Shown here: positions 3,001 through 58,046 of the stretch, one piece after another
Position numbering within the stretch: position 1 is the stretch's first letter
Layout of the letters: each line of letters starts with the position of its first letter
From: Trichosphaerium sp. ATCC 40318
Lineage: Eukaryota > Protista > Tubulinea
Direction: 5' to 3'
Assembly: GCA_038496445.1 (NCBI GenBank)
Contig: JALMLS010000596.1
Span: 62,001-126,000, forward strand
DNA length: 64,000 nucleotides
Notes under the pieces: generated by a model
What the model was told of the DNA's origin: nothing
The model's database searches: none
Seen by the model: the letters and a program-made list of their open reading frames with translations, nothing else
Program-made: the position numbers and the translations under genes

Positions 3001-6000
3001 AAGACATCTTTTTAACTCCACTCTTAGCTACTGGTGTTGATTTTGGCCCTGCGTTTACAGCGGATCTTCTTGGTAAAGAGTTGTATCCAGCAGTTAGTTT
3101 ATGGGATTCACAATCAATCGTCACTTGGACTATGGGTATGATGTCTTCTTTTGCTCTAAAGTAATCTAATTTTTTTGTAGTCGAGGATGACACTTCAGAT
3201 GATGAGTCTATTGGGTTTATGCCTGTACCTAAACGCACAAAGACACCTTCAACGAAAGTTCTAGATACTATTGTTTTAGCGAAAAAGCGAAGTTTGGAGC
3301 ATCTTGAGACACTGTCTGCTAGTAGTGCACCATCATCTTCGTCTTCTGATGATGAAGAAAGTGAAAAGTCAGAAGAAGTAATCAAAGAAAATATCTTTGG
3401 TCCTCCGAAAGATACTGAAACTGCCAATACCCACAGTGATCAACTTGATGATGGAGAAAGTTTGGAGCCTGTGGTTGACGATGAGGACAGCCAAGAAAGC
3501 GAAAAAGAAGAAGATCCAATGGACGCCAAAGAACGTATTCAAGCTTATTTGGAGCACAAACATATTGAGTTCTTAGCTACTCAATACGCTAATACTTTTG
3601 TTAATTGGTTTCAAGAGTCCTCAGAGGACAAAGTTAAAAAGCTCTCAGAGAAGTTGTGGATACTCATTTACAGAGTACGATAATGAAGTTTTTTGTAGTT
3701 TGTTTCTAATTCTTTTCAATCTTTAGGGTTCCCAAGATGGATTTCAACCTGAAGATTGGCTTCGTAGGGTAGTTAATACAGGACCTACGATAACAATCGC
3801 GACATATGGTAATTCACGTGTTGGAGGTTTCACATCAGAGAACTGGGTATGTCCTTTAGAAATTTTATTGAAAAAAAACAAACTGGGAAGCTGAAGTGCT
3901 TATTTTTGGTTGTAGGGTCGTCACTCAAATAGTGCTCATTACGTTCCTGATAGTTCTGCTTTCTTATTTCATCTTGACGGCGCTTTGGCTATTAATGGTG
4001 GTATTCATAATGTAACAAGTGGTTCGAATCAATACAGGTTTGAGGTTATGCCAGGAAAGGCACAGAATGCTATTTGTTGGACTGTACGTTTGGTTATACC
4101 AACAGTTCTCCTAATATAATTAAAAAGGGAAATGGCCCTTGTTTTGGTACTAACCCTGATTGGTGTGTTAATCTTCTCAACCCAGGCAGTAATTACAGCT
4201 GGCTAGGTACGTTTATTATTTAGTTTGTTTGGTTTTTTTTCTCAAGCTAACACGAAGTCTGTTTTTAGGTGGTCAATATGCAAGTCGTATTAAAGTGGTA
4301 GATTCGACTTCTTACCAAGTTGTTTCATATCTAGCACCTTCTGTAATTCCGAGTGATTTAGAGGTGTATTGTACATTGGATAAGTTTATAGAACGTGGTG
4401 AGTGAAAAACAAGTTTTTTCTTTGGGTCTTGCCTTTGATCTAACGCACATTGTGTTTTTAGGCATGTCGAGGAGAAACTTGACAATAGATAAAGATCAAA
4501 CGCTTGTAGTTCAACTTATTAACTTTACAAAAACCGTTTATGCAGAGCCTGAAATTATGGCAAGTATAAAGGATATACTATACAGTCTACCAGGTAAGTT
4601 TTTTTTCTTTTTGACATTACTTAAGTCTAACTGTCGTGTTTTTTACCAGATGATTCTTGGCTTCCTATAGCTAATACGTTATACCATTCAAAGTCATCAA
4701 AGGCTAAACTAAGAAGATCTATTCTGCCTTGGCTTATGGAAAAGAGTACCTCTTTCTTTTTCTTTTTTTAATTATTCCTGCTTAACTCTTTGTTTTGGCT
4801 TAGATGCTCTGCATGTCAGTTCCCTTCAAATAGAACCGTTTTCTATTGTTAGTGTCAATGGTAATCCACATACAGCACCTCGTTCAAAGGTTATTGTAGA
4901 AGAAACTAAGAAGAAAAAGAAAGAAAAGAAAACAACCAAAAAAAGCGAAACACCAGACACAAAATTACAAAAGATTATAGTAACACCAACAAGTACAAGT
5001 ACTAGATCTCGTTCTACAGAATCTATAGAAACAGAACCAAGCTCAGACGAGCAAATCAAGGATAAGGACCCATCATCAGGTGATAAAATGAAAGTAAGTT
5101 ATCTCATCATTAACGTTCTTTCTTATTTTTTTCCAACTTCGTTTTTAGGATGCTGTCCGTTCTGTCTTTGATGAAATGATCTTAACAACTGAAGATATGA
5201 TTATCGGTGTACCTGATAATAAGCTTACGTTTAAGAACTTTCCTCAATATACAACAGTTCCTGATGCTTTAGTATGGAACAATAATGTTGTCTCTTGTGT
5301 TAAAGCAGGAACAGAAATAATCCTAAAACAATCCACTGGCGAAGAAGGTAAAGCAGCACAGTCTCTTACTTTGTTTGACTCATATAATAGATTCTCCGTA
5401 TATTACACATGTGATATTGAAACTTACGCCTTATGCTATGCTTTATAAACCTCCAGAAGGAGAAACTGATTTTGCATTGTCTCTGTGAGTACCTCTTTTT
5501 TATGTTTTTGAATAATTTTTTTTGTATTCTTTTGACCTTTATCCAAGGTGTATAAACGCACAACCAGCAAGCTCAGCTATAATTACTTTTTCGAATACTG
5601 AGGATATAGAAATGCCTAGTGCAGATGATATACCTGAAGATGCCTTCAAAGATTATGATACAACGTGCGAAATTAAATTCTCACTTTAGTGATGTTGGCT
5701 CCAACTTATACTCATGTCCTAGCTATGTTGGCCAAGAAATCAATGTCGAATCCAATATATCTTATACTATGAGTGAATTATTGGCTGCTACTGAATCGCA
5801 TAATCTAAAACAAGGCATAGCTCCAGTACGTAATAAAAACTCTAATTGATGTTAAATTTATACTTACTGTTTTTGGCTAAGAGCAAGAAACCTACTGTTC
5901 CAGAACCAAAAATACAAAGCCTTATTGCAATGGGATTTGATAGAAAGATTGCACGTCATGCTTTAAGAGAAAATAAAGGAGATGTGGTTGCTGCTGTTAA

Positions 6001-8170: not shown

Positions 8171-10821
8171 TTAGGTCTCCATACTACTAAGTCTCCTTTC
8201 GCATCTAGCTCTTCCAGTCAAGTACACAGGAGCCATTTCCATAATCACTTCTTGTGGATCTACAGTAGTTGGTTCTACCTATGACATACCGTTAGTGGAA
8301 GAGATAATGTAGCCTAGTGCTGTTAATCGACTTGAAGTCATTTAGCTTGAAACCGAACTCCAAACCTTCTATTTGTTCAGGGCAAGTCAAGCATCAGCAT
8401 TATTGTCTCACAAACGGAGTTTTTTTTTATGGTGGAATTTTTTGCCTCTTTTTCTTTACGTACTGTTACAACTATGTTCTCAACAGCAAGCATATCAACT
8501 ACTTCTGTTACTGCCATATCATCACCCACGAACGCTCCTACGATTTCAGGGACAGTCATATCGCCTCCTAACATGTGATTGAGTCTCATTTTTGTGCACA
8601 TCTGATGGTTAATCAAATTGGTATTATACCTCCGTTTGAGTTTACTGTAACAACTACTCTAGTTCCTGCTGTTTGACGTTTTGCAACCACGTTGTCAGGT
8701 TCTTGGGTGATAACTCCATCATTGGGTCCGAGATTCATTGCAGCTAACATAGCTTCTCCAACAGATTGTACAACTTGTTGCTCTGCTGGGAACGGATTGG
8801 AAATAGACACTGATACACTACCTACAGTCCACAAATGTCAACTTTGCAAAAGTCTTTGCTGATAAAAAGTTATTTGTGGTTCTTACTTGTATCTGGACAT
8901 AAGAAAGGAACAGTAGCATCAAAAGAAACACTACCATTCTAAAAAAAAAACGCGATTAACATAAACTGAAAGAAATACAATTCTTGAGGCCTACCCCTAG
9001 TCGCCATGTCGTAGGCAGACCCACAAAAATAAAGTCGAATCCTCCTACAGCAGGATAAAAAGGAGGTGTATTTCCAAACATTTCTGGAACTGCTGTAAGG
9101 CCTACAGGAGTCATTAAATTTTCAGGTCCTTGATTCAATGTTACAGGCATCTGTTTAAGTAAATTAGCACTATGCATACAATAATCGGTTTAGAATTATG
9201 AGTACATTTGTTGTCCATCCCATATGAGCAGTGAAAGTACCATCAAGGTTGTCAGTAACGCAATCCATACGTGGTGTTATTTGTAGTGGTGCTAAAGTTG
9301 GCGGAAATGTTGTAGGAGGTAGTGTAGTTGGCGATAGCGTTGTTGGTGGTAGCGTTGATGGTGGATTTGTAGTTGGTGATTGTGTTGTTGGTGGTAGCGT
9401 TGTTGGTGGCACTGTTGTAGGAGGTAGTGTAGTTGGTGATAGCGTTGGTGGTGGTATCGTTGTAGGTGGTGCTGTTGTAGGAGGGCTTGTAGTTGGTGAT
9501 TGTGTTGTTGGTGGTATCGTTGTTGGTGGATCTGTTGTTGGAGGGCTTGTAGTTGGTGATTGTGTTGTTGGCGATACCGTTGTTGGTGGCTCTGTTGTAG
9601 GAGGGCTTGTAGTTGGTGATCGTGTTGGTTGTGCTGTTGGCGGTGGCAATGTTGTTGGTGGATCTGATGGTGGAGGTGCTTGTGTTGTTGGCGGATCTGA
9701 TGGTGGAGGCGCTTGTGTCGTTGGAGGATCTGATGGCGGTATTTGACGTTTTATGTTTATTATGTCCACGCTTTCAGGACAGAAGTGTATGCTTCCAAAC
9801 TTGGTTTCTCTAAACAACTGTACATTACCTTGGTGTTAGAGTTAGCTAACTATCTAGCACAAGTACTGAACGTAGTTTAATATATATAGAACGTACCTGA
9901 TGCTTTGTTTAGTAAATAAACAGAGCGCGAAGACATGTTCTTTATCAATAGGCTTGAATCATTATTCTTAGTTAGTATGTCCATGTGTCCTTTTACTGAA
10001 GTGATTGTTTTGATCGTGGTACTGTTAATGTAGCATTCATTAGAGGATGGAACCAAGTCTGACAGAAAATGGAATATTGTACTCTCTTCGCCGTTGTAGG
10101 TTGATAAAAAAGTTGAATCTCCATCGACGGTAACTACACAAAACGATTAATGAGACAATTTCTACTTAGAGAAATCGCTAGAACAAAAGCATGTGCTTTT
10201 TTTCTATAGTTTAGGTTATTTTTACTTACTGGCTATTACTTCTGTTTCAATATTGGCTTTACACGTGTGTTCTTGTTTTGAAGCGCACATGCTGTTGGTT
10301 TTAATTGAGTATTGATCAAATTGTTTCTTTTCATTGGAATAAAGAACTAAGGTGTCTTCGGTTGAAAATGAACCAGCAGAGTACTCGTAAGGTAGCCCAG
10401 TATCACAAAGAAGAGTTCCATCAATATCGTAAATAAATAGCGACAAGCCATCAACGACAATGAAGTAAGAGCAGTCTTCAGACGGAACTAGAATAAAGGA
10501 GGGTCAAAAGGAGGCAAAAGGGAGAAAAATATTAGATCTCTTCGTTAGTATCGTACATGAAAATGACCCAGGAACCAAGGTGTGACTGTATTCCGTACGA
10601 TAATCTAGAAGAAATTATCGTTACAGATGAGAACTTAGTGGAAATGAATACATACTATTTTTGAGATTGTTATCAGCTATCCACATTGTTTGTTTATGGT
10701 TGTTTTGATAATCTTCTTTTGCTGTTGAAACAAATCCAATAAAGTTAGATTTTGTAGAAGCCTGAGCTTTGGTATACGCTATGAGACATAGAAATAATAT
10801 AATTGAAATAGGTAATCTCAT
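8171..10821 (-). CDS. Secreted Pro/Thr-rich (mucin-like) multi-exon protein
   Basis: Signal peptide MRLPISIILFLCLIAYTKA from ATG at 10821. PPTT repeat stalk followed by a TPRMDCVTDNLDGTFTAHMGW module. The 3' end is approximate. Confidence 0.7.
9290..9742 (-). repeat. Coding tandem repeat: ~15-nt (P/S)PTTx units plus three PPSDPPTT units
   Basis: Visible imperfect repeats (gttgttggtgg/gtagttggtgat) translating to PPTT-rich sequence. Confidence 0.9.
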
Positions 10822-38425: not shown

Positions 38426-40826
38426 TTATAATTTAGCGCGTTGAATGTTTAGTTGAGCCTTAGAAACCCATAATCCATGGAACCCATAAGGTACACGTTG
38501 AGCAAGAGCTACACGACACACAACTGACATATTCTTGGCATCAAGAACAAGGACCTTAGAGTAAGAAACAGTAAGAGATAAAGTTATTTGATTTTGTAAC
38601 TTACCTCAGAATTATTCTTTGTTTCATCGTAAATATAACCAACCAAGTATCCCTAAATTTTGAGTTTCAGTATAATTTTTTAACCTAATATAAAACTCTT
38701 ACATCATCCTCAGCACTATTTGTCCCTGTTTTATTGATAAAAACGAATTCTCCTCCGTATCTTTGTTCACCATGAAGCCATCGGATTTTTTCTTTGAAAA
38801 AAGCTTAGAATAATAACCATACGGGTGCCATGGTATTGACATGCTTATGTCGCTCTAACACCTTACCTTTTGTCTCTAGATTAATCTTCTCGACGCCATT
38901 GTAATGTGGCATCTCACTAGACGTGCGTATAGCGTAATAAGCATACCTAAGGATACCATAAGGAAGAAATGCATAAAAATAAGCTGCTGTTTTCTATTAA
39001 GGTGACTTACTGGCATTTCCTTCCAGTGTAATTATTATTTATCACAGGGAATTCTGTATCATAATCAAGAGGCATCATAGGCTCGTCTTCTATTTTACCA
39101 GTTTCCATATCAAAACACCAATGGTGTATTATACCAAACTGTAAAAATATAATCATTAGTTCTTTTTCTCAAAACGAAAGCAAACGCACGTTTTTTCTCC
39201 CAGCATAGGACAAATTAAAGTCTAATGTCTTATACCTAGTACCATACAAGTGTACTTTAGAACCATCTTCCCATGCATTTCCTGTATGGAACATAAAGAA
39301 AGAAGGCATCTCAAACCATTTGATTTGAGAGTCGTCCTTTGGCAACAATCAGTTTCGAGCGGTTTGGTTTGAATATTTCTTTACCTTCATGTGTCGCGGA
39401 CCAATACCTATCCTAGCTGGCATTTCAGGCCTGAATGTGCCCAATCTACCACCATTAGCTGGAGCTTTTGTAGCATCATAGACCAAAGGTAGATCCAAGA
39501 AAACAGTGTAATTCTTGGTAATTGCACAGTCATGCATCTTGTGGAAATAAACAAGTCAGTTTCGCCTCTCATTTGACCTTTAAGTACCAATACAGGCGCT
39601 TGGACCTTGATTTTAACATCTTTTGATAGTTTTCCATCCTTACTAACAGTATTGTATTTTATGTAAGGCGTTTTTGCATCGTAACCAAAGAACATCATTT
39701 CGCCGGTTTCTGGATCAATCTGAAAAGTAAGTTGTGGAACTAAATTATTTCTAACACTCACCTTTGGGTGTGCTGTGAATGAGTGTTTCAGTTTATTGTT
39801 GTAGGTATAAGGGCCAACAGTATCCAACGTTTGAGCAGTAACCCAGGTAGGTGCGCTACCTTCAACCAAAGCCATGAGCCGTCTAACACGAAATTACATT
39901 ACTCAGTCACGTGTACAAGTAAAACAGGTAAAATAAATTTGAAGGTACGTACTTGTCGTGAAAAACCAGTGCAGTGTTCGCTGTGTTTTCTATACAATTG
40001 AACAACGGTTAGAGCGATTTAAAAAAAAACAATTAAAAAAAATTCACATCGTACTATTCCAAGGGTTAGGTGCACCTCCCCAATACGCTTTTCGGAAAAT
40101 ATGATACATCATGTGCATTAAACTCCTGTATTAGAAGGTAAGAACATATACTACACGTATACCATAGCAGGTGAGAGGCAAAAATTATTGTTTTTTTGGA
40201 TTTGTTCGAAACATTTTTCACCAACTTGGAACACAAAAAAAAAAGCACGTACGCTAGGCCTACCAAGTCGGTATAAACAGAATAATAGTATGCCTTTCCA
40301 AGCTGTTTCTCGTATAAATAGCCTCTTGTTTCTATAAACCTTCAAATTTAAAAAATGAGTTGATAACACGTGAGAAACGTTAAAAAAAAGCAACAAACTC
40401 ACTTATTGACAAACGACACTTGTCCTTGAGAAAATCTAACAGCGTGTAACATGCCATCACCTAAAAACTTAGATACACGCTACACACATCTATGAGCTCA
40501 CCCATAAACCAGTGGTAGTCCCTTTTGATAAAGTTAAAATTAATTGAAGTTGTACGATCATGTTTCTTACTTTATTGGTGCGAATTGAGGATTTGGTCCA
40601 TTTCCTGAGGGTTTTGAGCGTCATTGTGGTAAATGGAGCGTGTAAAAAGAATGTTCAGACGTACGAACGAATAGACCATCTAAATCGTGTGGAATCGCTC
40701 CTTTTGTTGTGTCAGTGCGTATGGTAAATATTTTAACGCACCTTCAATGATACTAAGATTAACGGCTGTTGTTTCCTTTGTAACAGGCTTAAAATTGCCA
40801 GTTAATGCCTCACGTTGTGTTGTCAT
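38426..40826 (-). CDS. Carotenoid cleavage dioxygenase (CCD/RPE65 family) with C-terminal PTS1 (-AKL)
   Basis: GNFKPV; RNGPNP; HWFMGDGMLH; FTAHPKIDPETGEM; MHDCAIT; FHTGNAWE; GGEFVF; EDDGYL; RVPYGFHG. Ends QRAKL*. Confidence 0.92.
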
Positions 40827-42291: not shown

Positions 42292-45200
42292 ATGGGCGGA
42301 GGAAGCAGCAAACCAGAACCAAAGCCACCAGCGCCAACAGAGATTATTACGGCTAACGATGCCGGTGAGATTAAGATGTATGCTCACCCGGACTTCCAAG
42401 GCAGTTGTTGGAGTTTTAGTTCAGCGGCAAGGACAATATCAGGTGACAATCAAGTCTCATCCATTCGTGTGATCAAAGGTACTATAGAGTTTAAACGCTT
42501 TGCTTAAATAGTATCTAGGCTATTGGGTTCTCTACGAGAATTCTGGGTTCACTGGAAAGCGGTATTTTTGCCATGAGACAGGCGGACCACTGCGTGAGTT
42601 TTTTTTTTTTTTTTCAAAAAACTCAGAAACAAGCTTCTTCTTTCAGTCTGAAGTTTGTCTTAGGAGATGGCAGATACCCTCACCCAGGAAAAGATGGTAA
42701 ATTTTTCTTCAGGGGTGACGTTATCAGTAGTGTTCAACCAGTACGTCAAAAAAGTTTACTTTGTCTATTTAAGGATGTAACGTTTGGTTTCTTTAGGTTT
42801 CTCGTGCTGTTGTACAAATGTTCATTGGAGGCGACCAAACCGCTTACGATTTGTATGTGTCAGACAAAGTTGCTCAGTCTCATGATGCGTACACATCTAT
42901 AAGGGTTCACGGTAAGTCTTTAACAGCTTTTGTTTTAAAGCACTTGTTTAACATCATTTGTAGGCGGTGCTTGGCGTGCTCGAGAGTACCACAGGTCATC
43001 AAGAAATGGACAACTCTGGGTACAAAGCGAGGTATTTTGAAGAAACAACTAACATCCAGTAGGATTTCCATGCAAAAGGCGGAAGAGGTTTGAACTAAAG
43101 CACAATTCACATCTTGTTCTAAAGTGGTATTTAGGTAACAATGCGTTTTATGATGCTATGAAAGGAGATTTTAAAAATGATTCTATTTCTGATGTTGAAT
43201 TTCTTGGAGAGGATTATATCGCATGTTACGCTGAAGAAAACTTTAAAGGTATGAAGCATTGTTTTTTATTTTGTTTTGATTGTCAACTTTTTTACCTTCT
43301 ATTTTAAGGCCGTTGCACGTGCTACGGAAAAAATGCCTCATATGCTTATGGCTTCAAGTCTTGCATTGTAGGCGGACAAGGAAGTTGGTTACTGAAAGCT
43401 GAGGACTCTATGTTCTACGTGAAGGCAACCGGAGGTGATAAAGGTGACGGGCGATACCCAAGTTCATCATTTTGGGCAGGCGCTAAGATTAAGTCTGTCG
43501 AAATGTACCAACGTACGATTAATAAGTCGAACAACCAGGTTCTAATACGAAACCTTAGCTTCTGAGGAAACCCAACCTGCCATTATCTTCTACAACGACC
43601 CTAATTTTGGAGGAAAAGGAACCTTGCTTCAAAGCGCATGGGGTGCTGGTAGTGTTGTTACATACGGTACAAAAACAACTGGAAGAACTGAACCTTACAC
43701 TTTACATAGGCAGTAAGATTCTGATTGGTGCTGTTGATACTCCGTTCTTTTTGTGGTCCAAGAAGCAGCACTATAGAACAGGTTCAAAGCAACAAATGGG
43801 TAAGTGCATATGCACTTTTACTTGCATCTGGTTGTAACTCATTTCTATGATAGTCGCTCTTATGGGAGGTAAACAACAATCATGGATTGTAAGACCTTAC
43901 ATGGGAGAACCTAACAAGAAAGGTCCAGTCAAAAGTGGAGATTTGATAAGACTTTGGCATGAGACACGTACTTGCGCTTAACTCAACTGTTATTCCTACT
44001 AATGTCCCTTTAAAGGCGGTTACCTTCACAGCCACGAAGGACATGATAGTCCACAACGCTCTGGACAAGAGGTTACTGTGTGGGAAGGATACGATCACAA
44101 TGATCAGTGGGTATTCACTCTCGATGATTGTAAGTACTGATTGTGTGGTGCTATTGCTAGATTGCTAACGCTTTTTTAAGCACCTGTATGGACGCCTCAT
44201 TCTACGTTTAAGTTGAGACATAAATCAACAGGGAAATACCTAAGCTTCACAAACGTGAATATGAGCCAAGCTCCAGGGTCTAAGGAGGTACGATTAAAAA
44301 AAGCTTATTTTTTGTTGCTGACGTATTTGTGAAGGTTTGTGCTGGTTCTGGATCAACGAAGTGGGAATGTACCAGGATTGTTGAGCATGCTGGTACGCTA
44401 TAGTGTATGCATCTTGCTTTCATTGTGCTTATCCGTTTTGTACTAGATGATGGTTCACTCGACAACGTTTTTTCATCCGCTCAAGTCATTAATGGAACAT
44501 GGATAGCGTATGATAAGAAAAACCAGAGTGGAGACTTCGTTACGTTTGCTTCCGATGGTGGAGAATCCGCACTAACTCCGGACGTAATTACTTATGGTGC
44601 GGTCGCTTATTAAAACACTTGAATTAACAAATTAAAGGGTCCAAGCTTCGCTTGAAACACAGTGCTCAAAAGAAATACCTCACTGGCGGTTCACTACACT
44701 TCCCAGGAGATAGAGACTACTACAGAGAGGGTACGGTAACAGCAGCACTTACACATAAGCTTACGATCGATTCGTAGTGTTCTGTATTCCAGAAAAAACT
44801 GAAGAATCCGTTTGGATTGTATGTGGTGAGTATGGTACAAATGAACGAACAGGTGAACCTATCGCAAATGGAAATGTACTTCGTTTGAAAAACGAAGAGA
44901 CAGGCACGTGCTATCACGTGATTGTTTTTTACCGTCTAACTTCTGTACTACAGGGTTTTTTCTTAGTAGCAAATCTGGTACAGAAAGTGTCATGAGCAAA
45001 CAACAAAAGGCGTATGTATACGATGGTAGGGAGCGCGATGATGCCAATCTGCGCTTGGAGTTGAGCAGCAACACGTCATGGACAATTGGTGCTGAGTGTA
45101 AACTTATTCATGTTGAAACGCACCATGCTTTGCACAGTCATAGTACAGAGTATAAAACCACATTCCATGGAAGAACCACTACAACACAAGAGGTACTAGT

Positions 45201-48200
45201 AAACTGGCATTACTAGGTAAGTAACACTTGTAGGTTACATTCCATACACACCGTGATCACAACGATATGTTCATTGGTGATGACATGCTGTACCAAGCAC
45301 GTTCTGCTCATGGTACAACTTTCCGTAGCTTATCAACCAAACGCTTACTCAGTTTATTGTAGGTAACGGAAGGTATTCAACACTTCCTACAAAGCTAGAT
45401 AATAAGATTTCGGCTGTATCTCCGTTGATTTATCCTCTTATTGAACTGTATGATGAAGAAGCTTTTGATGGTCAAGTTGAAAAGCATACATCAGCATCTT
45501 CCCATCTAGAAATGGAATCTCATAACTCAATCATTGTACGCAATGGAACTTGGGCTGGATTTACAGAAGTATATGGAGGTGAAGCGTACCTCTTGGATCG
45601 CTTTGGAGGTCCTGGCCGTAAGTATTTTTAGCAATTACAGTTGTACTAATGATTTCTTTCTATAGAAAATGGTCACTACCTTCACGCTGAAGACTGGGGT
45701 GGTATGCCATCTTTTAAGAGTTTGATGCTTTTGTCTTGGGATTATAGCCTCATAGAAGTCTTTTCTGAGCCAGATTATGGCGGTGTGATGATGCAGTTCA
45801 TAAGCACTCATCACAAGATTCCTCTTGATCACACTGTTGGTTCAAGTACGCCTACATTACAGTTTACTTTCATTTTCTCACTGTGACTATAGTTCGTGTC
45901 ATTAGAGGTACATTTATCTTGTACTCCACACAAGATTTGAAAGGACAATCCTTTACTGTTTCAGCTTCAGATGGTCCTAGAGGTACAAATTAAATGTCAA
46001 GTAATTTCAGTACTAATTACTATACTAAGGAGATGGACGTTATAGTGAAGCTGACGATTGGGGTGGTGCGGAAGTTGTTATCAAGTCTATCGAGTTGCCA
46101 GATGATACCTTCTACGCTGCACGTGGACTATTTATTCAACTCGTTTCTTACCTTTTTCTTTTGCACAGGCCGTTGTTTCTGGATCAAAGGTACAGCTTAA
46201 CCACCTTGACAGCGGAACGCACTTAGGAGAATACGAGATCATAAGGCACGCAAAGTTTATCTTAGAACTGTTGTACTTATGCTTCTTTAGGGAAGGTGAT
46301 CGCCCTGTTAGTTTCTACCTATCAAACGGTATTATAAACGGCGATGAAGTGTACCTCAGGGAAGATGATGAATATTTCACTTGGAGAGGAGAACCAAGAG
46401 AAGGGCTTGAGCGTTTCGAAACAAACAGAAGCAAACCAGAACCTTGGATAATTAAGATTGCAGATAATGGCATGTTAGCTTCTCATACGCGCTTCACTCT
46501 ATCTCCAAAGGGTCATGATGATCTCTATCTATCGTATGAAGACCGCGGTAAGTTGTAATAAGCTAGCACGTGCAGTATTTTATGTTGATTTTCTGTTTAG
46601 ATACGGTTTTGTTGCCTATGCGTAAAGATCCCTACGAACATGACTTCATTGCCGCTAACTACCGCGCTGATGACTTGGATATAAGACTTGAGAGATTCGT
46701 CGGGTATGATCGTGGCGATGATGCTACATTCTTCGATGATGGTCCTGTTCTAAGAGAAGAAGTCCTCACCGAAATCAGAGCTAGCAAAGACTTTAGAAGC
46801 TACCAACTTGTGTATGTTTGTTTCTTGCTTCTATAACAAGTTTCTAACGTTACCAAGATACTCATACATTGATGGAAAAGGTGTAACACGTTTGGCACCA
46901 TCTGAGAAACGTGGTAACCAACAATTGGAATGTGACCAAAGGTGAGAATCAACGTACTGTTTCGTAATTTTTTCTTACCGCTTCGTTTTTTTCTAGGATG
47001 AAGGTCAATGTTACAGACCCTAATCTCGAAATTGAAATATTCTATGAAAGTAATAGTATTACGGGTATCACTATCGGGTCTCAAAGTTTGGGAAGCACTA
47101 AAGGAAGAGTACGAAAAATACAAAACAATAAACAAAAAATGCTAATCTTTGTTTGTCTTTAGTCAAGATCTTTCGACATGGATAAAGGAAAGCAATTCTG
47201 TGGATTCAGAGGATATCAAATGGATACTCACATAACAAGACTTGCGATTCAATACCGTATGGTTAAAGGAAGTGTACGTACTTACCATATAATTGTGATA
47301 GCCGATCGTTACTTACTCCAAAAAGGGATGGCTTGCTCGCTACTTCAAAGAGAAAGGATGTATTGGAGAAATGTTTATTGGCGTTAAGACTTTGGAAGAG
47401 CCACCACCATTTACGTACCAGAGTGCTCTACTGACTGGATCATTCCGCTCTCGACAGAGAATGGACAAACCAAAATTCTGTACGTATTCATCCAATACCA
47501 AGTTCATAACCTCAAAGTTCATTACCAAATGTTTGAATCTGTATCGTTCGCCTGAAAAAGTTCGTTTGTGCTCAATTGTACTTATTGATTTTTACTCTAG
47601 CACTTGAAGGTTGGAACACATCAAAGTCAAAGATAACAGTTGACAATCAAGTTGTCAATGAAAACAATGCTGACAAGACTCATAGCGTAAAAGTTTTTGA
47701 TGGATCTGTTCATGGTGTATCTGTATACATGGAATGGAACGCTGCAGACAAGCACACCGGAACATTTAAGGTAATGCGCTAGCTATTAACAATACCTATC
47801 TTTTACTAATGAATCAATAGATTAAAGAGGGTAGCGCTGGATACAATGTCGAAACTAAGGATATGTACCCTGGCATGACTGAGCGTGATGTATTGAGAAG
47901 CTACTTGCTTAACATGCCCCCAACAAATGCTTTTGGAAGAGCTTTCATCGCTGTTTTGTTGACAGAAACAGATACTTCTGCTGAAACTGTTGCTGTTCAA
48001 AAGACATTCGCAGCCAATAAGAAGCTTATTCAAGTTCTTACCACTAACTGGATGGAAAACGAAAAGGAAGCAAAGTGCGTTCTCCAAACAAATCAACTAG
48101 TAGTGTATTAACTTATTACCTAAAGGAACTACTTGTTTGACAACATCATGGGCGCTATTGACGAAAAACTACAAATAGAAACCTTCAGTACGTTCCAGAT

Positions 48201-50249
48201 TTGGATCTGATTTATCACGTGTTTAATGCTTTTCGTAGAAAAGACTGTTGTTGATAAAAAGCATTACGTTGTTGCTGATGATGTCCGTCTCTCTGAGGTG
48301 ACGTCTTGTTATATTCTGCAAATTCTTACTTTTTCTGCAGGTACTTAAAGTCAAAGAATACAAAGACCTTGCTTTGGGTTACCTTGGTGTTATGGCTTAC
48401 AACTCGGATCCTAAACGCTACAACATGATCAATAAGGCTAAGATCAATAAAGACATGGCAGCCATGTTCAAATCTAAGTGGGCAATTGATGGTAAGACAA
48501 TAGATATTGCAAAAGAAAGAACTCACTCCCTTTACTAGAAACAAAACGTATCAGCGATATGCTAAGAACCAAGTACCAACCTCAAATGGCATTCTCTCAA
48601 GTTTCCCCCCAAGAAGTGAGCCACTATGTGGATGACATTGGTGCTATTCTTGATACACCAACATTCAGGTACATAAAGACAGTTATAACAATTCCCTAAG
48701 CACTACTCCAGATCTACCTTTATGAAGATGACGACTTCTGATCAAATTGAAGCTGCTAAAGCTGTTATTACAGTATTCACTGCTTTGGAGCCTAAAGTAG
48801 AAAAATGGGAACCTTATCTTCGTACTATAATGGCCCTAGTATCAACCTCACGTACGGCTTATCGCAGTGTATTGATTCATTATTACTCACACGTGTTAAA
48901 GATGAAATGAGCTCAATGGAATCTGTAATAGCTGCTCTTGAAAGAGACGAGCTAGCATTCAGAAAAGCCTTGGCGGAAACTCTCGGTGGAGTACGTATTT
49001 ATCCAGAATTCGAGCAAAATCTTACATCGGAATCAGATAGGTGACGCTGAAAAGGAACAAATTGTAGTGTGGAGTAAACTATTCGGATACTCAGGTAACC
49101 TCTTTTACTCTTTACCCCAATTAACTTCTTTCAATAGCACCTGCGTTTACTGAGGCTGCAGAATACTATATCGACTGGTTTGTTGGTCAAGTTACCAGCA
49201 ACCCAAACAAATACAGGACAAGTACGTAAAAACTGTTTATCTAGATTTTTCTTTCTGTTTTTTTTCTTTTAGTTTTTCTGTTGTTTTTGTTTTTGCTAAA
49301 ACAGGTTGTCTAGGCAAGGGAAGACAAGCTCTGCAACAAGATTTCGATGATGCAGTTGAAGGATTTCAGCTTAAATGGGCTCAAAGGAAGAGTATGGTAA
49401 AACTCTTTGCAAAAGTAGCTGCTATTTCTGGTATTATCGCTGTAGGCTTTTCAGCCAACTTTGATACGCCAGTGAACTCTGCGTACTTTGGTGTTAGCCT
49501 CGCTGATGGTATGTACTATTTCAAAGTCATTTATCAAAATTAAAACGCTGTGTAGCTATAGCGAATGCCTCAGAAAGCATAACTAGCTTTGCTACTTATC
49601 TGGATGATATTCTCGTAAAGTACAGCAAGACAATGCAAAAACTCCATAACAAAATATTGTCTCCTTTGAAGACTGTTATAGCTAAGGCTGGATCTAAAGT
49701 AGCTTCAAAAGCAGCTGCAATATCGGCAAACTTCGGAAAATTGGTGCGTAATGAGAAGACTTCTTTGAGTAATGCTTTTTTTCTTACTTTTTTCGCACAG
49801 ACCGCAAATCTTGGAAAGCACGCTGGTAAACTGTTAGGACCTACTCTCGGCGTGATTGCATCTGCATTTTCGTTTTACTACGCTTGGGAATCGTTTGAAA
49901 AGGGTGATATTGTAGATGGAGCTCTTAATGTTGTTGCCGGAGTTGTTGGAGTACTAAGTATGTTGAACAGCTGGTATTAGATTGAAACTAATGTTCGTTT
50001 AGCTGGAGTACTTGCTGGTATTAATGCTGTTACTGGATGGATGCCTGGTATCAATGCTGTAATGGTTCGTTAATTGTTTCTTGGTTCTTTCTGTTTTGCT
50101 AACTTTTTATCAAGGCTGTGGCTTCGCTTTTGGTTCTTGTTGCTACTCTGTTATGGACTTTTGTATTGAAGCCAAAGAAGAAGCACGAGTTAGTTCGTCA
50201 ACTGAAACTCAAAGGATGGGCAACATCAGAATTGAAAGAAGATTACTAA
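42292..50249 (+). CDS. Giant predicted N-myristoylated beta/gamma-crystallin + MIR + jacalin-like + PA14-like protein with hydrophobic, pore-former-like C-terminus
   Basis: A continuous spliced reading frame across more than 35 short introns from MGGGSSKPEP to KEDY*. Crystallin motifs (MYAHPDFQG..DNQVSSIRVIKGYWVLYENSGFTG). MIR motifs (SGDLIRLWHETRGYLHSH..QEVT). Domain names are by motif recognition only. Confidence 0.8.
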
Positions 50250-50490
50250 GGGCTAAGCTATCTATAATAGCAAACATTCAACGCAATAAATCTCTTTCCT
50301 TTCATACTAGTCGCTTACTCCAACAATTATTTTTGGAAAACTCAAGAGGTGATGGCATTAATATGAAAAGCATTGTTGAAAACAAGCCTTACAAAGAGGG
50401 AAACATTGAACGATACAGAGTGATACATAGCACAGAGTGAGCATTTTGTGAACAAAAAAAACCAAAAGCAATTAAGTGAAATGTATTTAT

Positions 50491-55811: not shown

Positions 55812-58046
55812 ATGAATTGTAAAGTCACGTGGCTATTTGTTTTATTGGCACTGATACAATTGACTCTTTCGGTTACTGTACAATTACATTGGGAGGTAAA
55901 AGAGATGCTAGCGTATCCAGATGGCATGCTACAAGCAGTGGTACAATTATTTCTTCGTTATCTCTCCACAAGCTCTTAACTTGTGTTAGATAGCTATTAA
56001 TGGCGCATTTCCTGGTCCTACTATACGTATAGACATGGGCGACGTACTACACGTGACTGTAAAGAATTTATTGAGCGAAACGACATCAGTCCATTGGCAT
56101 GGCATTGAACATAATTTTGGTAACGCATCGACATTTATGGACGGCGTTGAAGGTGTAACACAATGTGGTATACGTCCAGGATACTCATTTACATATAAAT
56201 TTACGCCACAGGCGCCAGGGACGCACTGGTAATGCATTTAGGCTTTTTTCATAATTGTATCACGTACCTACAATTTTAGGTATCATGCTCATTCTCATGG
56301 TCAACGTACAGAAGGGTTCTATGGTACACTCATAGTAAATCCAACAAATGAATCAGCGAATCCTCTTCCCATTGAGTACAGATACGATGAAGATTTTGTT
56401 GTGATGGTACATGAAGCGTATGTAGTGTATTGAACTTTGACTTTCAATGATAATTTATCTGTTAGGTATCACGTGTCAGATAAGAGGCGAGTGGAAATAT
56501 ATGACCATGCTACATCAGTTGATGAAGTTTCCTGTGTCCAATCTCTTCTGTGTAATGGCAAAGGAGTCTTTAACTGCTCAATGGTATGTACTGTTAGCAT
56601 TGCGAAGGTTCTCTGACACATTGCGATAGGTAGGACAGAATGTATCATACCCGTACTGTCCTCAACATTTGTACAATACATACAGCGATTGTCGTGAAGG
56701 AGAATACGAAAGATATTCAGGTACACTAAGAACCGATTATATGACGTTACACTCCTTTTTAAAATACTTTAGTTACAACGGGTAATACGTACATGTTGCG
56801 TATAGTTGCTGCAATGTCTGATTTGGACTTTGTGTTTTCAGTTGATGATCACGATGTTGACGTACGTCAATTGGTTTACTCTTGTTCTTTCTCGCTAACG
56901 TACTTAGATAATAGCAAGTGACTCACACTTTACAAAACGTCTATCATCTGGAGGATTTATTTTACACAGTGGCGAGACGTATGATGTACTTCTTACAGCA
57001 AACAAAGAATCAGGTACGAAAATAATTATTATTGTATTTGAGCATTTTTCCTCTAATTGTGTATGCCAGGTAGCTTCTGGATTCGACTTGAGTTCCCTGC
57101 TGAAGGTATGAATAGTAAGTATTCAAACCTTTTAAACGTGAGTCCATCTAGGAAGCAAGAACGAGGCTGATAATCACAAATTCGCAATCTTAAGCTACAA
57201 TGGAGATGAATCAATTCCAGTTTCAACAACAAATCAACATGATCGTATCCTTGACACAATCGATCAATTAGAGCCTTACTACTATCGCCAAGTACCTGGT
57301 TTTAATAAGGAAATAGAAATGACATTCAATTCTATAAAAGGTCCCACGTTTACAGTAAATGATGTAGCCTTTGAAGTACCCGAAACACCTTTTATTTTCG
57401 GAGGTGGAAATAAAGATTCATTGTACACAGTGCCTCTTGGCTCTTGGGTTCAAATAGTTTTGAACAACCCTTTCAACAGGTAAGGGCTTTATCATTTTTT
57501 CAACATATGAAGAACCTACCTCCTAAACGCTCTTATACAAACATACACTCACTTTTTTCTAGTGGATTCCATCCAATGCATATTCATGGTCACTCTTTCT
57601 ATGTGATGGGTAGTGGCGCTTACAATGGTTCATACAAAAGCGAGTATAGTAAAGATTTTAAAGAACATCCTGTGTTGAAACACACCGCATTAATGCCACC
57701 GAAGGGTTGGACTGTCGTTCGATTTAAAGCAGATAATCCAGGATTTTGGTTCCTTCATTGTCACAAAGAACTTCATTTTGAGAAAGGTATGGCTGCAGTG
57801 ATCAATGAATTTGGCGGTCCTTTACGTGTACCTGAAGATGTAGATATGTGGTGTGTAAATAGACAAAACTCTTGGTGGGATAGAATCTCTTTAGGTGAAA
57901 AAATGAGTATTGTGTTTGTGCCGATAGGAGTAGCATTGATATTAATGACTGTATGGGCTGTATATGCTACTGTCATGTGGCGTAGAGCTTCTAGAAGCAG
58001 ACTAAGAGACAACTATGAAGAGCTAGTTTCTACTATCACAACGTGA
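55812..58046 (+). CDS. Multicopper oxidase (laccase/ascorbate oxidase/Fet3-like), type I membrane protein, paralogue 1
   Basis: Signal peptide; HWHG, WYHAH, HPMHIHGH, HCHKELHFEKGM; C-terminal TM helix (IVFVPIGVALILMTVWAVYATVMW). Confidence 0.93.

What the first reader, a model, noticed from the sequence alone, without database searches (positions are those of the whole stretch)
43575..45425. One beta/gamma-crystallin domain interrupted by two complete MIR beta-trefoils (nested domain insertion)
Compared with its intact sister repeats, the fourth crystallin domain reads PAIIFYNDPNFGGKGTLL-[MIR trefoil ~43710-44390]-DNVFSSAQVINGTWIAYDKKNQSG..DGG-[MIR trefoil ~44580-45310]-GNGRYSTLPTKLDNKISAV. 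The inserts fall in the two variable loops. Three of the four insert boundaries lie at or next to phase-1 introns, which suggests exon shuffling. Inference: Ca2+-dependent folding of the crystallin could position or regulate two trefoils. Double nesting is rare and would defeat standard domain annotation.
Basis: partly seen in the sequence, partly recalled or inferred. Interest (0 to 1): 0.75.

Follow-up and report, generated by a model that had tools for sequence, protein, structure and literature searches.

The report
Two trefoils nested in one crystallin
In a large multi-exon gene of an unidentified eukaryote, one small beta/gamma-crystallin domain is cut into three pieces by two complete MIR beta-trefoil domains; the only known relative keeps this rare double nesting, but its folding has not been tested.

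Summary
Window 43576-45424 (+) lies in a 22-exon stretch (42292-46109) that encodes six beta/gamma-crystallin domains. This stretch is the start of a gene of about 2000 codons that runs to about 50250.

The fourth domain is in three pieces of about 25, 40 and 20 residues, which add up to a normal domain length. Two inserts of about 166 and 188 residues separate the pieces, and both belong to the MIR family by exon-level homology. Each insert sits between strands b and c of one Greek-key motif.

The intron at the 3' edge of MIR2 lies at the same codon and phase as an intron in sister domains 1, 5 and 6. The two MIR modules share five intron positions and phases.

The only relative found among about 15 billion proteins and four contig collections is a metagenome contig (L001). 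It keeps the middle piece, MIR2, the C-terminal piece and the tail of MIR1, at 46-61% identity and with the same introns.

Phase-1 introns are the gene's background (17 of 21), and the Ca2+ motif is not conserved.

Verdict: a real new arrangement of known domains, structurally untested.

The parts
42292..50250 (+). Whole gene: N-terminal M-G-G-G-S-S start, six beta/gamma-crystallin domains (42.3-46.1 kb), then about 4 kb of further conserved coding exons. The 3' end is approximate.
   Evidence: Exon table to 46109 reads without stops. The crude DP model reaches a stop at 50073 or 50249. The stretch is collinear with L001 up to window 50240.
43576..43650 (+). Domain 4, piece 1: Greek-key motif 1, strands a-b (canonical Y-x4-F-x-G hairpin) plus a Gly/Ala-rich linker.
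   Evidence: 15 of 17 PDB matches at E<=10 are named crystallins or clostrillin, aligned to a first hairpin. It ranks 36th of 3075 hits with a sister-hairpin profile, with 13 training pieces above it.
43651..44392 (+). MIR trefoil 1, about 166 codons in six exon parts (43651-43666, 43710-43799, 43854-43967, 44016-44129, 44181-44287, 44335-44392). It has three MIR sub-repeats.
   Evidence: Exon 44016-44129 scores 70 bits against MIR proteins, and its neighbours score 17.5 and 16.1 bits; all are above 1040 decoys. Pfam MIR E=0.017 for 44183-44287.
44447..44568 (+). Domain 4, piece 2: end of motif 1 (Ca-motif-like D-N-x-x-S-S and strand d), then the motif 2 a-b hairpin and the D-G-G loop.
   Evidence: Pfam Crystall 18.0 bits, E=0.003, profile 32-56 of 82. 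All 48 PDB matches are crystallin family, best gamma-S E=4.6e-4. 46% identical to L001 287-424.
44569..45312 (+). MIR trefoil 2, about 188 codons in five exon parts (44569-44596, 44638-44730, 44778-44903, 44954-45192, 45234-45312).
   Evidence: The representative search with 44953-45195 returned 28 hits; 25 of the 27 other than the L001 fragment carry Pfam MIR. SDF2-like 3MAL E=6.6e-5. 47-49% identical to L001.
45363..45424 (+). Domain 4, piece 3: motif 2 strands c-d (G-N-G-R-Y start, D-N-K-I-S-A). Domain 5 follows after a 4-residue linker.
   Evidence: It lies in the same exon and frame as domain 5 and is conserved in L001 1288-1356. Its start matches the sister c-d profile, rank 20 of 2583 with 6 training pieces above. 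Alone it has no crystallin match in PDB.
43667..43709 (+). Phase-1 intron after Y-G, five codons inside MIR1.
   Evidence: It has the same position and phase as the intron at 44597-44637 in MIR2 and as one in L001.
44393..44446 (+). Phase-1 intron at the 3' border of MIR1.
   Evidence: L001 has an intron at the same position and phase.
44597..44637 (+). Phase-1 intron after Y-G, nine codons inside MIR2.
   Evidence: It is present in L001, where it has a GC donor.
44904..44953 (+). Phase-1 intron inside MIR2 that needs a GC-AG reading (donor GCACGT).
   Evidence: Only this reading keeps the hydrophobic F-L-S-S segment that L001 also has (L-F-L-C-S-H). A GT alternative deletes that segment.
45313..45362 (+). 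Phase-1 intron at the 3' border of MIR2, at the ancestral intron site of motif 2.
   Evidence: It splits the same codon (the residue before [DN]-G-[RH]-Y), in the same phase, as introns 42594-42663 (domain 1), 45618-45665 (domain 5) and 45983-46029 (domain 6). It is absent in L001.

Best explanation
Domain 4 of a six-domain beta/gamma-crystallin array is a real discontinuous domain. Its two Greek-key motifs are each interrupted, between strands b and c, by a complete three-repeat MIR beta-trefoil.

Inferred fold: the three crystallin pieces (about 85 residues together) form the usual two-motif wedge. A beta-trefoil has its two ends side by side (established knowledge of the fold), so each trefoil can hang from a Gly-rich loop without breaking the parent. 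The two insertion points are related by the domain's pseudo-twofold axis, so the crystallin domain would act as a rigid hub that holds two trefoils in a fixed, roughly symmetric geometry within a rod of crystallin domains.

Inferred function: the trefoils are the ligand-binding parts (sugar, lipid head-group or protein) and the crystallin is the scaffold.

Inferred origin: an ordinary domain 4 received a MIR module at the phase-1 intron of motif 2. A copy of the same module, with the same intron pattern, went into the equivalent loop of motif 1, or the reverse order. This happened before the two known species split.
For: Shown:
- An uninterrupted reading frame runs across all 12 exons of the region.
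- The middle piece maps to the junction of motif 1 strand d and the motif 2 hairpin in Pfam and in solved crystallins. The N-terminal piece maps to a first hairpin.
- The piece lengths add up to a normal domain.
- Motif 1 and motif 2 of domain 4 carry the type-specific features of the sister motifs: G-T-W at the start of motif 2, x-G-R-Y in motif 2 c-d, and the same linker spacing to domain 5.
- Both inserts are MIR-family and full size.
- The MIR2 3' intron coincides with the sister-domain intron site.
- MIR1 and MIR2 share five intron positions and phases and the T-Y-G-S-K start.
- L001 keeps the tail of MIR1, the middle piece, MIR2 and the C-terminal piece in order, at 46-59% identity, and shares six introns. 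The Ser, the G-x-W, the hairpin Gly and the D-G-G loop are kept there.

Precedent: AIM1's first domain keeps its fold despite a large bulge in motif 2 (PMC2929430).
Against: - No structure prediction or whole-domain HMM score exists, because the joined step was left out.
- No single exon reaches a Pfam gathering score.
- The C-terminal piece alone finds no crystallin in PDB.
- The sister-profile scores of the three pieces are low in absolute terms (3.3-4.8 bits).
- The motif 2 hairpin lacks its second aromatic residue in both species.
- The first sub-repeat of each MIR is too divergent to beat decoys.
- The N-terminal piece and most of MIR1 cannot be checked in L001, because the contig starts inside MIR1.
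- There is no transcript evidence, and one intron needs a GC donor.
- Ligand binding and the scaffold role are inference only.
Confidence: 0.7

Rival explanations
1. The three crystallin pieces are relics. An old domain 4 was broken by the insertions and no longer folds, so its remains serve as linkers between two independent MIR trefoils and domains 3 and 5.
For: The per-piece scores are weak. The motif 2 hairpin has lost its second aromatic residue. The Ca2+ motif drifts between the two species. Sister domains 2 and 3 are themselves degenerate.
Against: Linkers would not be expected to keep the diagnostic residues (hairpin Gly, G-x-W, Ser of strand d, G-R-Y) at 46-59% identity, which is as conserved as the MIR parts. 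The pieces add up exactly to one domain, and both motifs keep their motif-type features.
Confidence: 0.15
2. The trefoils are optional cassettes. Each MIR block lies between phase-1 introns, so skipping it keeps the frame and would give a nearly normal domain 4. The nested form would then be only one of several isoforms.
For: Joining the donor at 43667 to the acceptor at 44446, or the donor at 44597 to the acceptor at 45362, preserves the frame (phases).
Against: In L001 the last MIR2 exon is fused to the crystallin c-d piece, so MIR2 cannot be skipped that way there. All MIR exons are conserved as coding sequence. No RNA data exist either way. This rival does not exclude the nested isoform.
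Confidence: 0.1
3. Artefact: a wrong gene model, an assembly chimera or a pseudogene makes separate MIR and crystallin genes look like one.
For: The model is hand-built from sequence. One intron needs a GC donor. An automatic DP model chose different junctions at four places.
Against: There are twelve consecutive exons with no stop, all on one strand, with regular 41-54 nt introns. An independent contig from another organism (GC 47% against about 40% here) has the same order, frames and introns. The middle exon itself contains both crystallin sequence and the first MIR strand, in both organisms.
Confidence: 0.04

Closest known systems
AIM1 / CRYBG1 (vertebrate non-lens beta/gamma-crystallin protein)
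   Same: It has six beta/gamma-crystallin domains in a row in a large non-lens protein, together with a beta-trefoil. Its first domain tolerates a large extra loop in motif 2 without losing the fold (PMC2929430). AIM1 and CRYBG3 domains are among the PDB matches of the middle piece.
   Different: In AIM1 the trefoil is a ricin-type domain placed after the array, not MIR domains inside a domain. AIM1 introns lie between motifs, whereas here most lie within motifs. No detectable orthology: sequence similarity is at the level of the superfamily only.
Microbial Ca2+-binding beta/gamma-crystallins (Protein S, spherulin 3a, clostrillin, Ciona crystallin)
   Same: The hairpin signature and a D-N-x-x-S-S motif appear in motif 1 of domain 4. 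Clostrillin and Ciona crystallin appear among the weak PDB matches.
   Different: Those are single or tandem uninterrupted domains. Here the motif is not conserved in the relative, so Ca2+ dependence is doubtful.
MIR domains of SDF2/SDF2-like proteins, protein O-mannosyltransferases and IP3/ryanodine receptors
   Same: They share the three-repeat beta-trefoil with the L-H-S-H and Q-E-V-T signatures. SDF2-like 3MAL is the only PDB match of the large MIR2 exon. In O-mannosyltransferases the MIR domain is also inserted in a loop of the host protein (from my knowledge of the family).
   Different: None of the 27 nearest MIR proteins has a crystallin domain. Their partners include U-box, phosphorylase-type, Vps62 and FG-GAP domains. 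The protein here starts with a myristoylation-like M-G-G-G-S-S and shows no obvious signal peptide, so it is probably cytosolic, unlike SDF2 and the O-mannosyltransferase MIR.
Nested (discontinuous) domains in general
   Same: A compact insert with adjacent ends sits in a surface loop of a parent domain, flanked by Gly-rich linkers.
   Different: Here there are two complete inserts, each about twice the size of the parent, at pseudo-symmetric loops of a parent of only about 85 residues. I found no report of this for crystallins.

Membership tests
Beta/gamma-crystallin domain (Pfam PF00030 Crystall) | Motif 1: Y/F-x4-Y/F-x-G folded hairpin and a conserved Ser in strand d | tested here: met
   Y-N-D-P-N-F-G-G at 43591-43614 and F-S-S at 44470-44478. 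The PDB alignments place them on the hairpin and strand d of gamma-S crystallin.
Beta/gamma-crystallin domain (Pfam PF00030 Crystall) | Motif 2: the same hairpin signature and Ser | tested here: inconclusive
   G-T-W, Tyr and the hairpin Gly are present, but the second aromatic is Gln (His in L001). The Ser position reads S-A in the window and L-S in L001.
Beta/gamma-crystallin domain (Pfam PF00030 Crystall) | Score above the Pfam gathering cut-off (25 bits) over the whole domain | tested here: inconclusive
   Only exon-by-exon scans were allowed. The middle piece scores 18.0 bits on profile positions 32-56, and the other two pieces are filtered out. Sister domains scanned the same way also stay at 23-24 bits. 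The joined test was left out.
Beta/gamma-crystallin domain (Pfam PF00030 Crystall) | Two Greek keys packing into one wedge-shaped sandwich | not testable with these tools
This needs the spliced sequence, which has no reference.
MIR domain (Pfam PF02815) | Homology to MIR proteins | tested here: met
   The MIR2 exon found 28 proteins; 25 of the 27 other than the L001 fragment carry Pfam MIR. Exons of both inserts score up to 70 and 63 bits, against at most 9.6 bits for decoys. 3MAL E=6.6e-5.
MIR domain (Pfam PF02815) | Three sub-repeats making a complete trefoil of about 185 residues | tested here: inconclusive
   The lengths of 166 and 188 codons and three G-x-h-x-L-type sub-repeats per insert are visible. 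Sub-repeats 2 and 3 are significant, but sub-repeat 1 of each insert does not beat decoys. No fold was computed.
AIM1/CRYBG family | Introns between motif-coding regions; ricin-type trefoil after the sixth domain | tested here: not met
   Only domains 1 and 2 have a between-motif intron, and most introns are within motifs (compared with PMC2929430). The region after domain 6 gave no Pfam hit and an unusable model, pLDDT 39.7.
Exon-shuffled module (symmetric 1-1 exon set inserted into a phase-1 intron) | The insert is flanked on both sides by introns of one phase, at a site where relatives have an intron | tested here: inconclusive
   The 3' side of MIR2 meets it exactly: same codon and phase as in domains 1, 5 and 6. 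Both 5' junctions are exonic, phase 1 is the gene-wide background (17 of 21), and L001 lacks that intron.

The most novel reading that the evidence does not exclude
The crystallin domain is a switchable clamp. Its folding or a rearrangement, triggered by Ca2+ or another signal, or the regulated skipping of the phase-1 MIR cassettes, would bring the two pseudo-symmetrically placed trefoils together into one composite binding site. This would be a way of gating a lectin-like or lipid-binding pair that has not been described. It would sit in a myristoylation-tagged protein of about 2000 residues that also carries other lectin-like segments and a Gly-rich hydrophobic C-terminus.
Probability: 0.1. 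Interest if true: 0.75.

Novelty: new variant of a known kind. Interest (0 to 1): 0.5.

Why it matters
If the three pieces do fold together, this is a natural case of an 85-residue all-beta domain that tolerates two inserts, each twice its own size, at symmetry-related loops. That bears on how robust Greek-key folding is, on the design of insertion-tolerant scaffolds, and on how introns guide domain insertion, since one insert border sits exactly on an ancestral intron. It also shows a class of architecture that per-domain HMM annotation and prokaryote-style gene calling miss. The only relative in the public protein collections is present as unconnected ORF fragments.

Tried and rejected
- Word-index searches with the MIR2 exon and the domain 3 exon found no candidates. 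A third search, with the most conserved downstream exon, found only the L001 fragment.
- The P0006 cluster has one member.
- Scans of JGI metagenomes (two), viral contigs and prokaryotic genomes found no relative.
- Literature searches for crystallin with MIR, domain insertion or trefoil gave only the AIM1 precedent.
- Small profiles built from sister hairpins and c-d pieces have little power: the domain 4 pieces score 3.3-4.8 bits, with ranks 20-36 among 2583-3075 hits. I use them only as weak support.
- Comparing MIR1 and MIR2 exon by exon shows only weak matches that are out of register between sub-repeats. Protein similarity therefore does not prove that they are each other's closest kin; the shared intron pattern is the argument.
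- A crude DP gene model chose other junctions at four places. I rejected these where homology to MIR repeats and to L001 supports the hand model.
- AlphaFold on the stop-free stretch 46106-46555, a possible third trefoil, gave pLDDT 39.7 and was discarded.
I redid the step from coordinates.
- I considered duplication of a "half-domain plus MIR" unit as the origin and rejected it, because motifs 1 and 2 of domain 4 each carry the type-specific features of the sister motifs.
- Rfam, tRNA and DNA-repeat scans gave nothing informative. The organism could not be named.


Full report
SETTING. The window is eukaryotic. GC content is 34-41%, and there are no tRNA genes and no Rfam matches. Genes are broken by very short introns. 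Nothing suggests a human origin. Pfam-recognisable neighbours include a multicopper-oxidase exon and a carotenoid-oxygenase exon. I could not name the organism.

GENE MODEL. Reading the three forward frames gives one long plus-strand gene.
- The exon table, checked from coordinates only, runs from the ATG at 42292 to 46109.
- The start reads M-G-G-G-S-S-K, which fits the N-myristoylation pattern as I know it.
- This stretch has 22 exons, 21 introns of 40-93 nt and 911 codons, with no stop.
- A crude dynamic-programming model and collinear similarity to a second locus up to window 50240 show that the gene continues for about 4 kb more. The whole gene is about 2000 codons.
- The first 911 codons hold six beta/gamma-crystallin domains. 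Exon-level Pfam hits to Crystall support domains 1, 4 and 5, and PDB matches support domain 5.

THE OBSERVATION. Domain 4 is in three pieces.
- Piece 1 (43576-43650) has a textbook Y-x4-F-x-G hairpin. Of its 17 PDB matches at E<=10, 15 are named crystallins or clostrillin, each aligned to the first hairpin of a Greek key. I recall from memory that one more, 3hzb, is a bacterial beta/gamma-crystallin domain.
- Piece 2 (44447-44568) matches Pfam Crystall positions 32-56 of 82 (E=0.003). It matches 48 PDB sequences, all of the crystallin family. The best is gamma-S crystallin residues 37-60 at E=4.6e-4. That is the end of motif 1 (strand d with its Ser) running into the hairpin of motif 2.
- Piece 3 (45363-45424) starts with G-N-G-R-Y, like the c-d part of motif 2 in sister domains 1, 3, 5 and 6. 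It ends four residues before the first strand of domain 5, the same spacing as between other domains. On its own it is too short to find crystallins in PDB.
- The three pieces have about 25, 41 and 21 codons, a normal domain length.
- Small profiles made from the sister pieces give only weak support: ranks 36, 25 and 20 among about 121,000 six-frame residues, after the 13 and 6 training pieces.

THE INSERTS. The inserts are 43651-44392 (about 166 codons, six exon parts) and 44569-45312 (about 188 codons, five exon parts).
- I used the one full search of 1.84 billion representatives, because the word search and the family scans had left the protein open. The query was the largest MIR2 exon, and it returned 28 proteins.
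- Of the 27 other than the L001 fragment, 25 carry Pfam MIR and none carries Crystall.
- In PDB the same exon matches only SDF2-like protein 3MAL (E=6.6e-5).
- I then scored every exon against 26 of these proteins and 1040 shuffled decoys. The exons covering sub-repeats 2 and 3 of both inserts beat every decoy: 70.3, 17.5 and 16.1 bits for MIR1, and 62.9, 21.1 and 15.9 bits for MIR2.
- The exons of sub-repeat 1 do not beat the decoys, although both begin with the MIR-like T-Y-G-S-K.
- Both inserts are therefore MIR-family and of full trefoil size. Completeness of the fold is inferred.

WHERE THE INSERTS SIT. In both motifs the insert follows strand b and precedes strand c, so the two sites are equivalent under the domain's pseudo-twofold symmetry. 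In motif 2 the insert replaces the middle of the Gly-rich loop that reads G-G-P-x-x-[DN]-G-[RH]-Y in the sisters. Gly-rich stretches flank all four junctions.

INTRONS.
- All four borders have a phase-1 intron nearby. Two lie exactly at the 3' borders (44393-44446 and 45313-45362). Two lie just inside the trefoils, after Y-G (43667-43709 and 44597-44637).
- Phase 1 is not special here, because 17 of the 21 introns are phase 1 and 4 are phase 0.
- Position is informative. The 3' intron of MIR2 splits the codon just before [DN]-G-[RH]-Y, exactly as introns do in domains 1, 5 and 6. MIR2 therefore lies at an ancestral intron site.
- MIR1 and MIR2 share five intron positions and phases, so they stem from one module at the DNA level. 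Their protein similarity is now low, and there is no DNA repeat.
- Motif 1 and motif 2 of domain 4 each keep the features typical of sister motifs 1 and 2. The domain therefore predates the inserts, and a duplicated "half-domain plus MIR" unit is unlikely.
- One MIR2 intron (44904-44953) must be GC-AG. The GT alternative removes a hydrophobic segment that the relative retains.

A SECOND ORGANISM. One hit of the big search, P0006, is a 94-residue ORF fragment that reads into an intron at the same Q-E|V site. Its contig is an ENA metagenome contig of 12,948 bp with GC 47%, fetched as L001.
- Exon-by-exon tblastn shows collinear similarity:
  - middle piece, 46%;
  - MIR2 exons, 47-49%;
  - piece 3 plus domain 5, 50% (59% in the MAFFT alignment);
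  - domain 5/6 exon, 61%.
- Similarity continues through the rest of the gene.
- Reading L001 shows six shared introns, one extra intron, and no intron at the MIR2 3' border.
- The contig starts inside MIR1, so piece 1 and most of MIR1 cannot be checked there.
- No other relative exists in the collections I could reach.
- The nesting is thus conserved across a divergence of about 50% identity, which argues against an artefact or a decaying gene.

The canonical Ca2+ motif (N/D-N/D-x-x-S/T-S, from my knowledge of the family) is present in motif 1 of the window and nearly present in motif 2. In L001 both copies carry a disabling change. Ca2+-dependent positioning is therefore possible in this species but is not a conserved property.

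STEPS LEFT OUT. The spliced protein has no reference.

VERDICT.
- The nested interpretation is the best reading (about 0.7).
- Exon shuffling is partly supported by intron position, not by phase.
- Ca2+ regulation is not supported.
- This is a new arrangement of two known domain types. The nearest precedent is AIM1, with six crystallin domains, a trefoil placed after them and a tolerated bulge in motif 2 (PMC2929430).

Noticed in passing
window 44904-44953; L001 about 428-492: Both organisms appear to use a GC-AG intron with the donor G|GCACG, at different positions of the same gene: after E-E-T in the window and after Y-G in L001. GC donors may be fairly common in this lineage.
   Followed up: partly
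window 42292-46109: Intron phases are strongly biased: 17 of 21 are phase 1, 4 are phase 0 and none is phase 2. Introns are 40-93 nt long, and many donors read GTAC.
   Followed up: yes
window 42292-42312: The protein starts M-G-G-G-S-S-K, which fits the N-myristoylation pattern, and no signal peptide is evident. This suggests a cytosolic, membrane-associated protein.
   Followed up: no
window 46190-46547 (L001 about 2015-2411): After domain 6 there is a conserved stretch with three G-x-x-h-x-L-like units that could be a third trefoil, which would resemble AIM1's layout. There is no Pfam hit, and the AlphaFold model of 46106-46555 is unusable, pLDDT 39.7.
   Followed up: partly
window 46968-47273: By eye these exons resemble a jacalin-like lectin repeat (I-T-G-I-x-I-G ... 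G-x-x-G). There is no Pfam hit exon by exon. They are conserved in L001 at 37-40% identity.
   Followed up: no
window 47860-48075 (L001 3647-3862): This is the most conserved part of the whole gene: 78% identity, with a 20-residue invariant run. It belongs to no known family.
   Followed up: partly
window 49574-50073: The C-terminal exons are rich in Gly/Ala-spaced hydrophobic helices of the glycine-zipper type, 56% identical to L001. This may be a membrane-inserting region. The matching L001 stretch 5259-5633 contains two stops in frame, so an intron or an assembly error lies there.
   Followed up: no
L001 1866-1977: In L001, motif 2 of domain 6 seems to lack the loop and the G-R-Y part. The frame changes within a few bases, with no room for an intron. 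This may be a real deletion or an error in a 1.69x-coverage contig. L001's domain 5 also has a 15-residue insert in its motif 2.
   Followed up: partly
window 9170-9817 (-): This long ORF is made of Pro/Thr-rich repeats (P-P-T-T / S-P-T-T units), like a mucin or cell-wall protein.
   Followed up: no
window 57444-58046 (+) and 39408-39875 (-): One exon encodes the C-terminal copper-binding domain of a multicopper oxidase, followed by a hydrophobic segment (Fet3-like layout). Another encodes part of an RPE65/carotenoid oxygenase.
   Followed up: partly
window 42600-42620: There is a run of about 20 T inside intron 2 of the gene.
   Followed up: no
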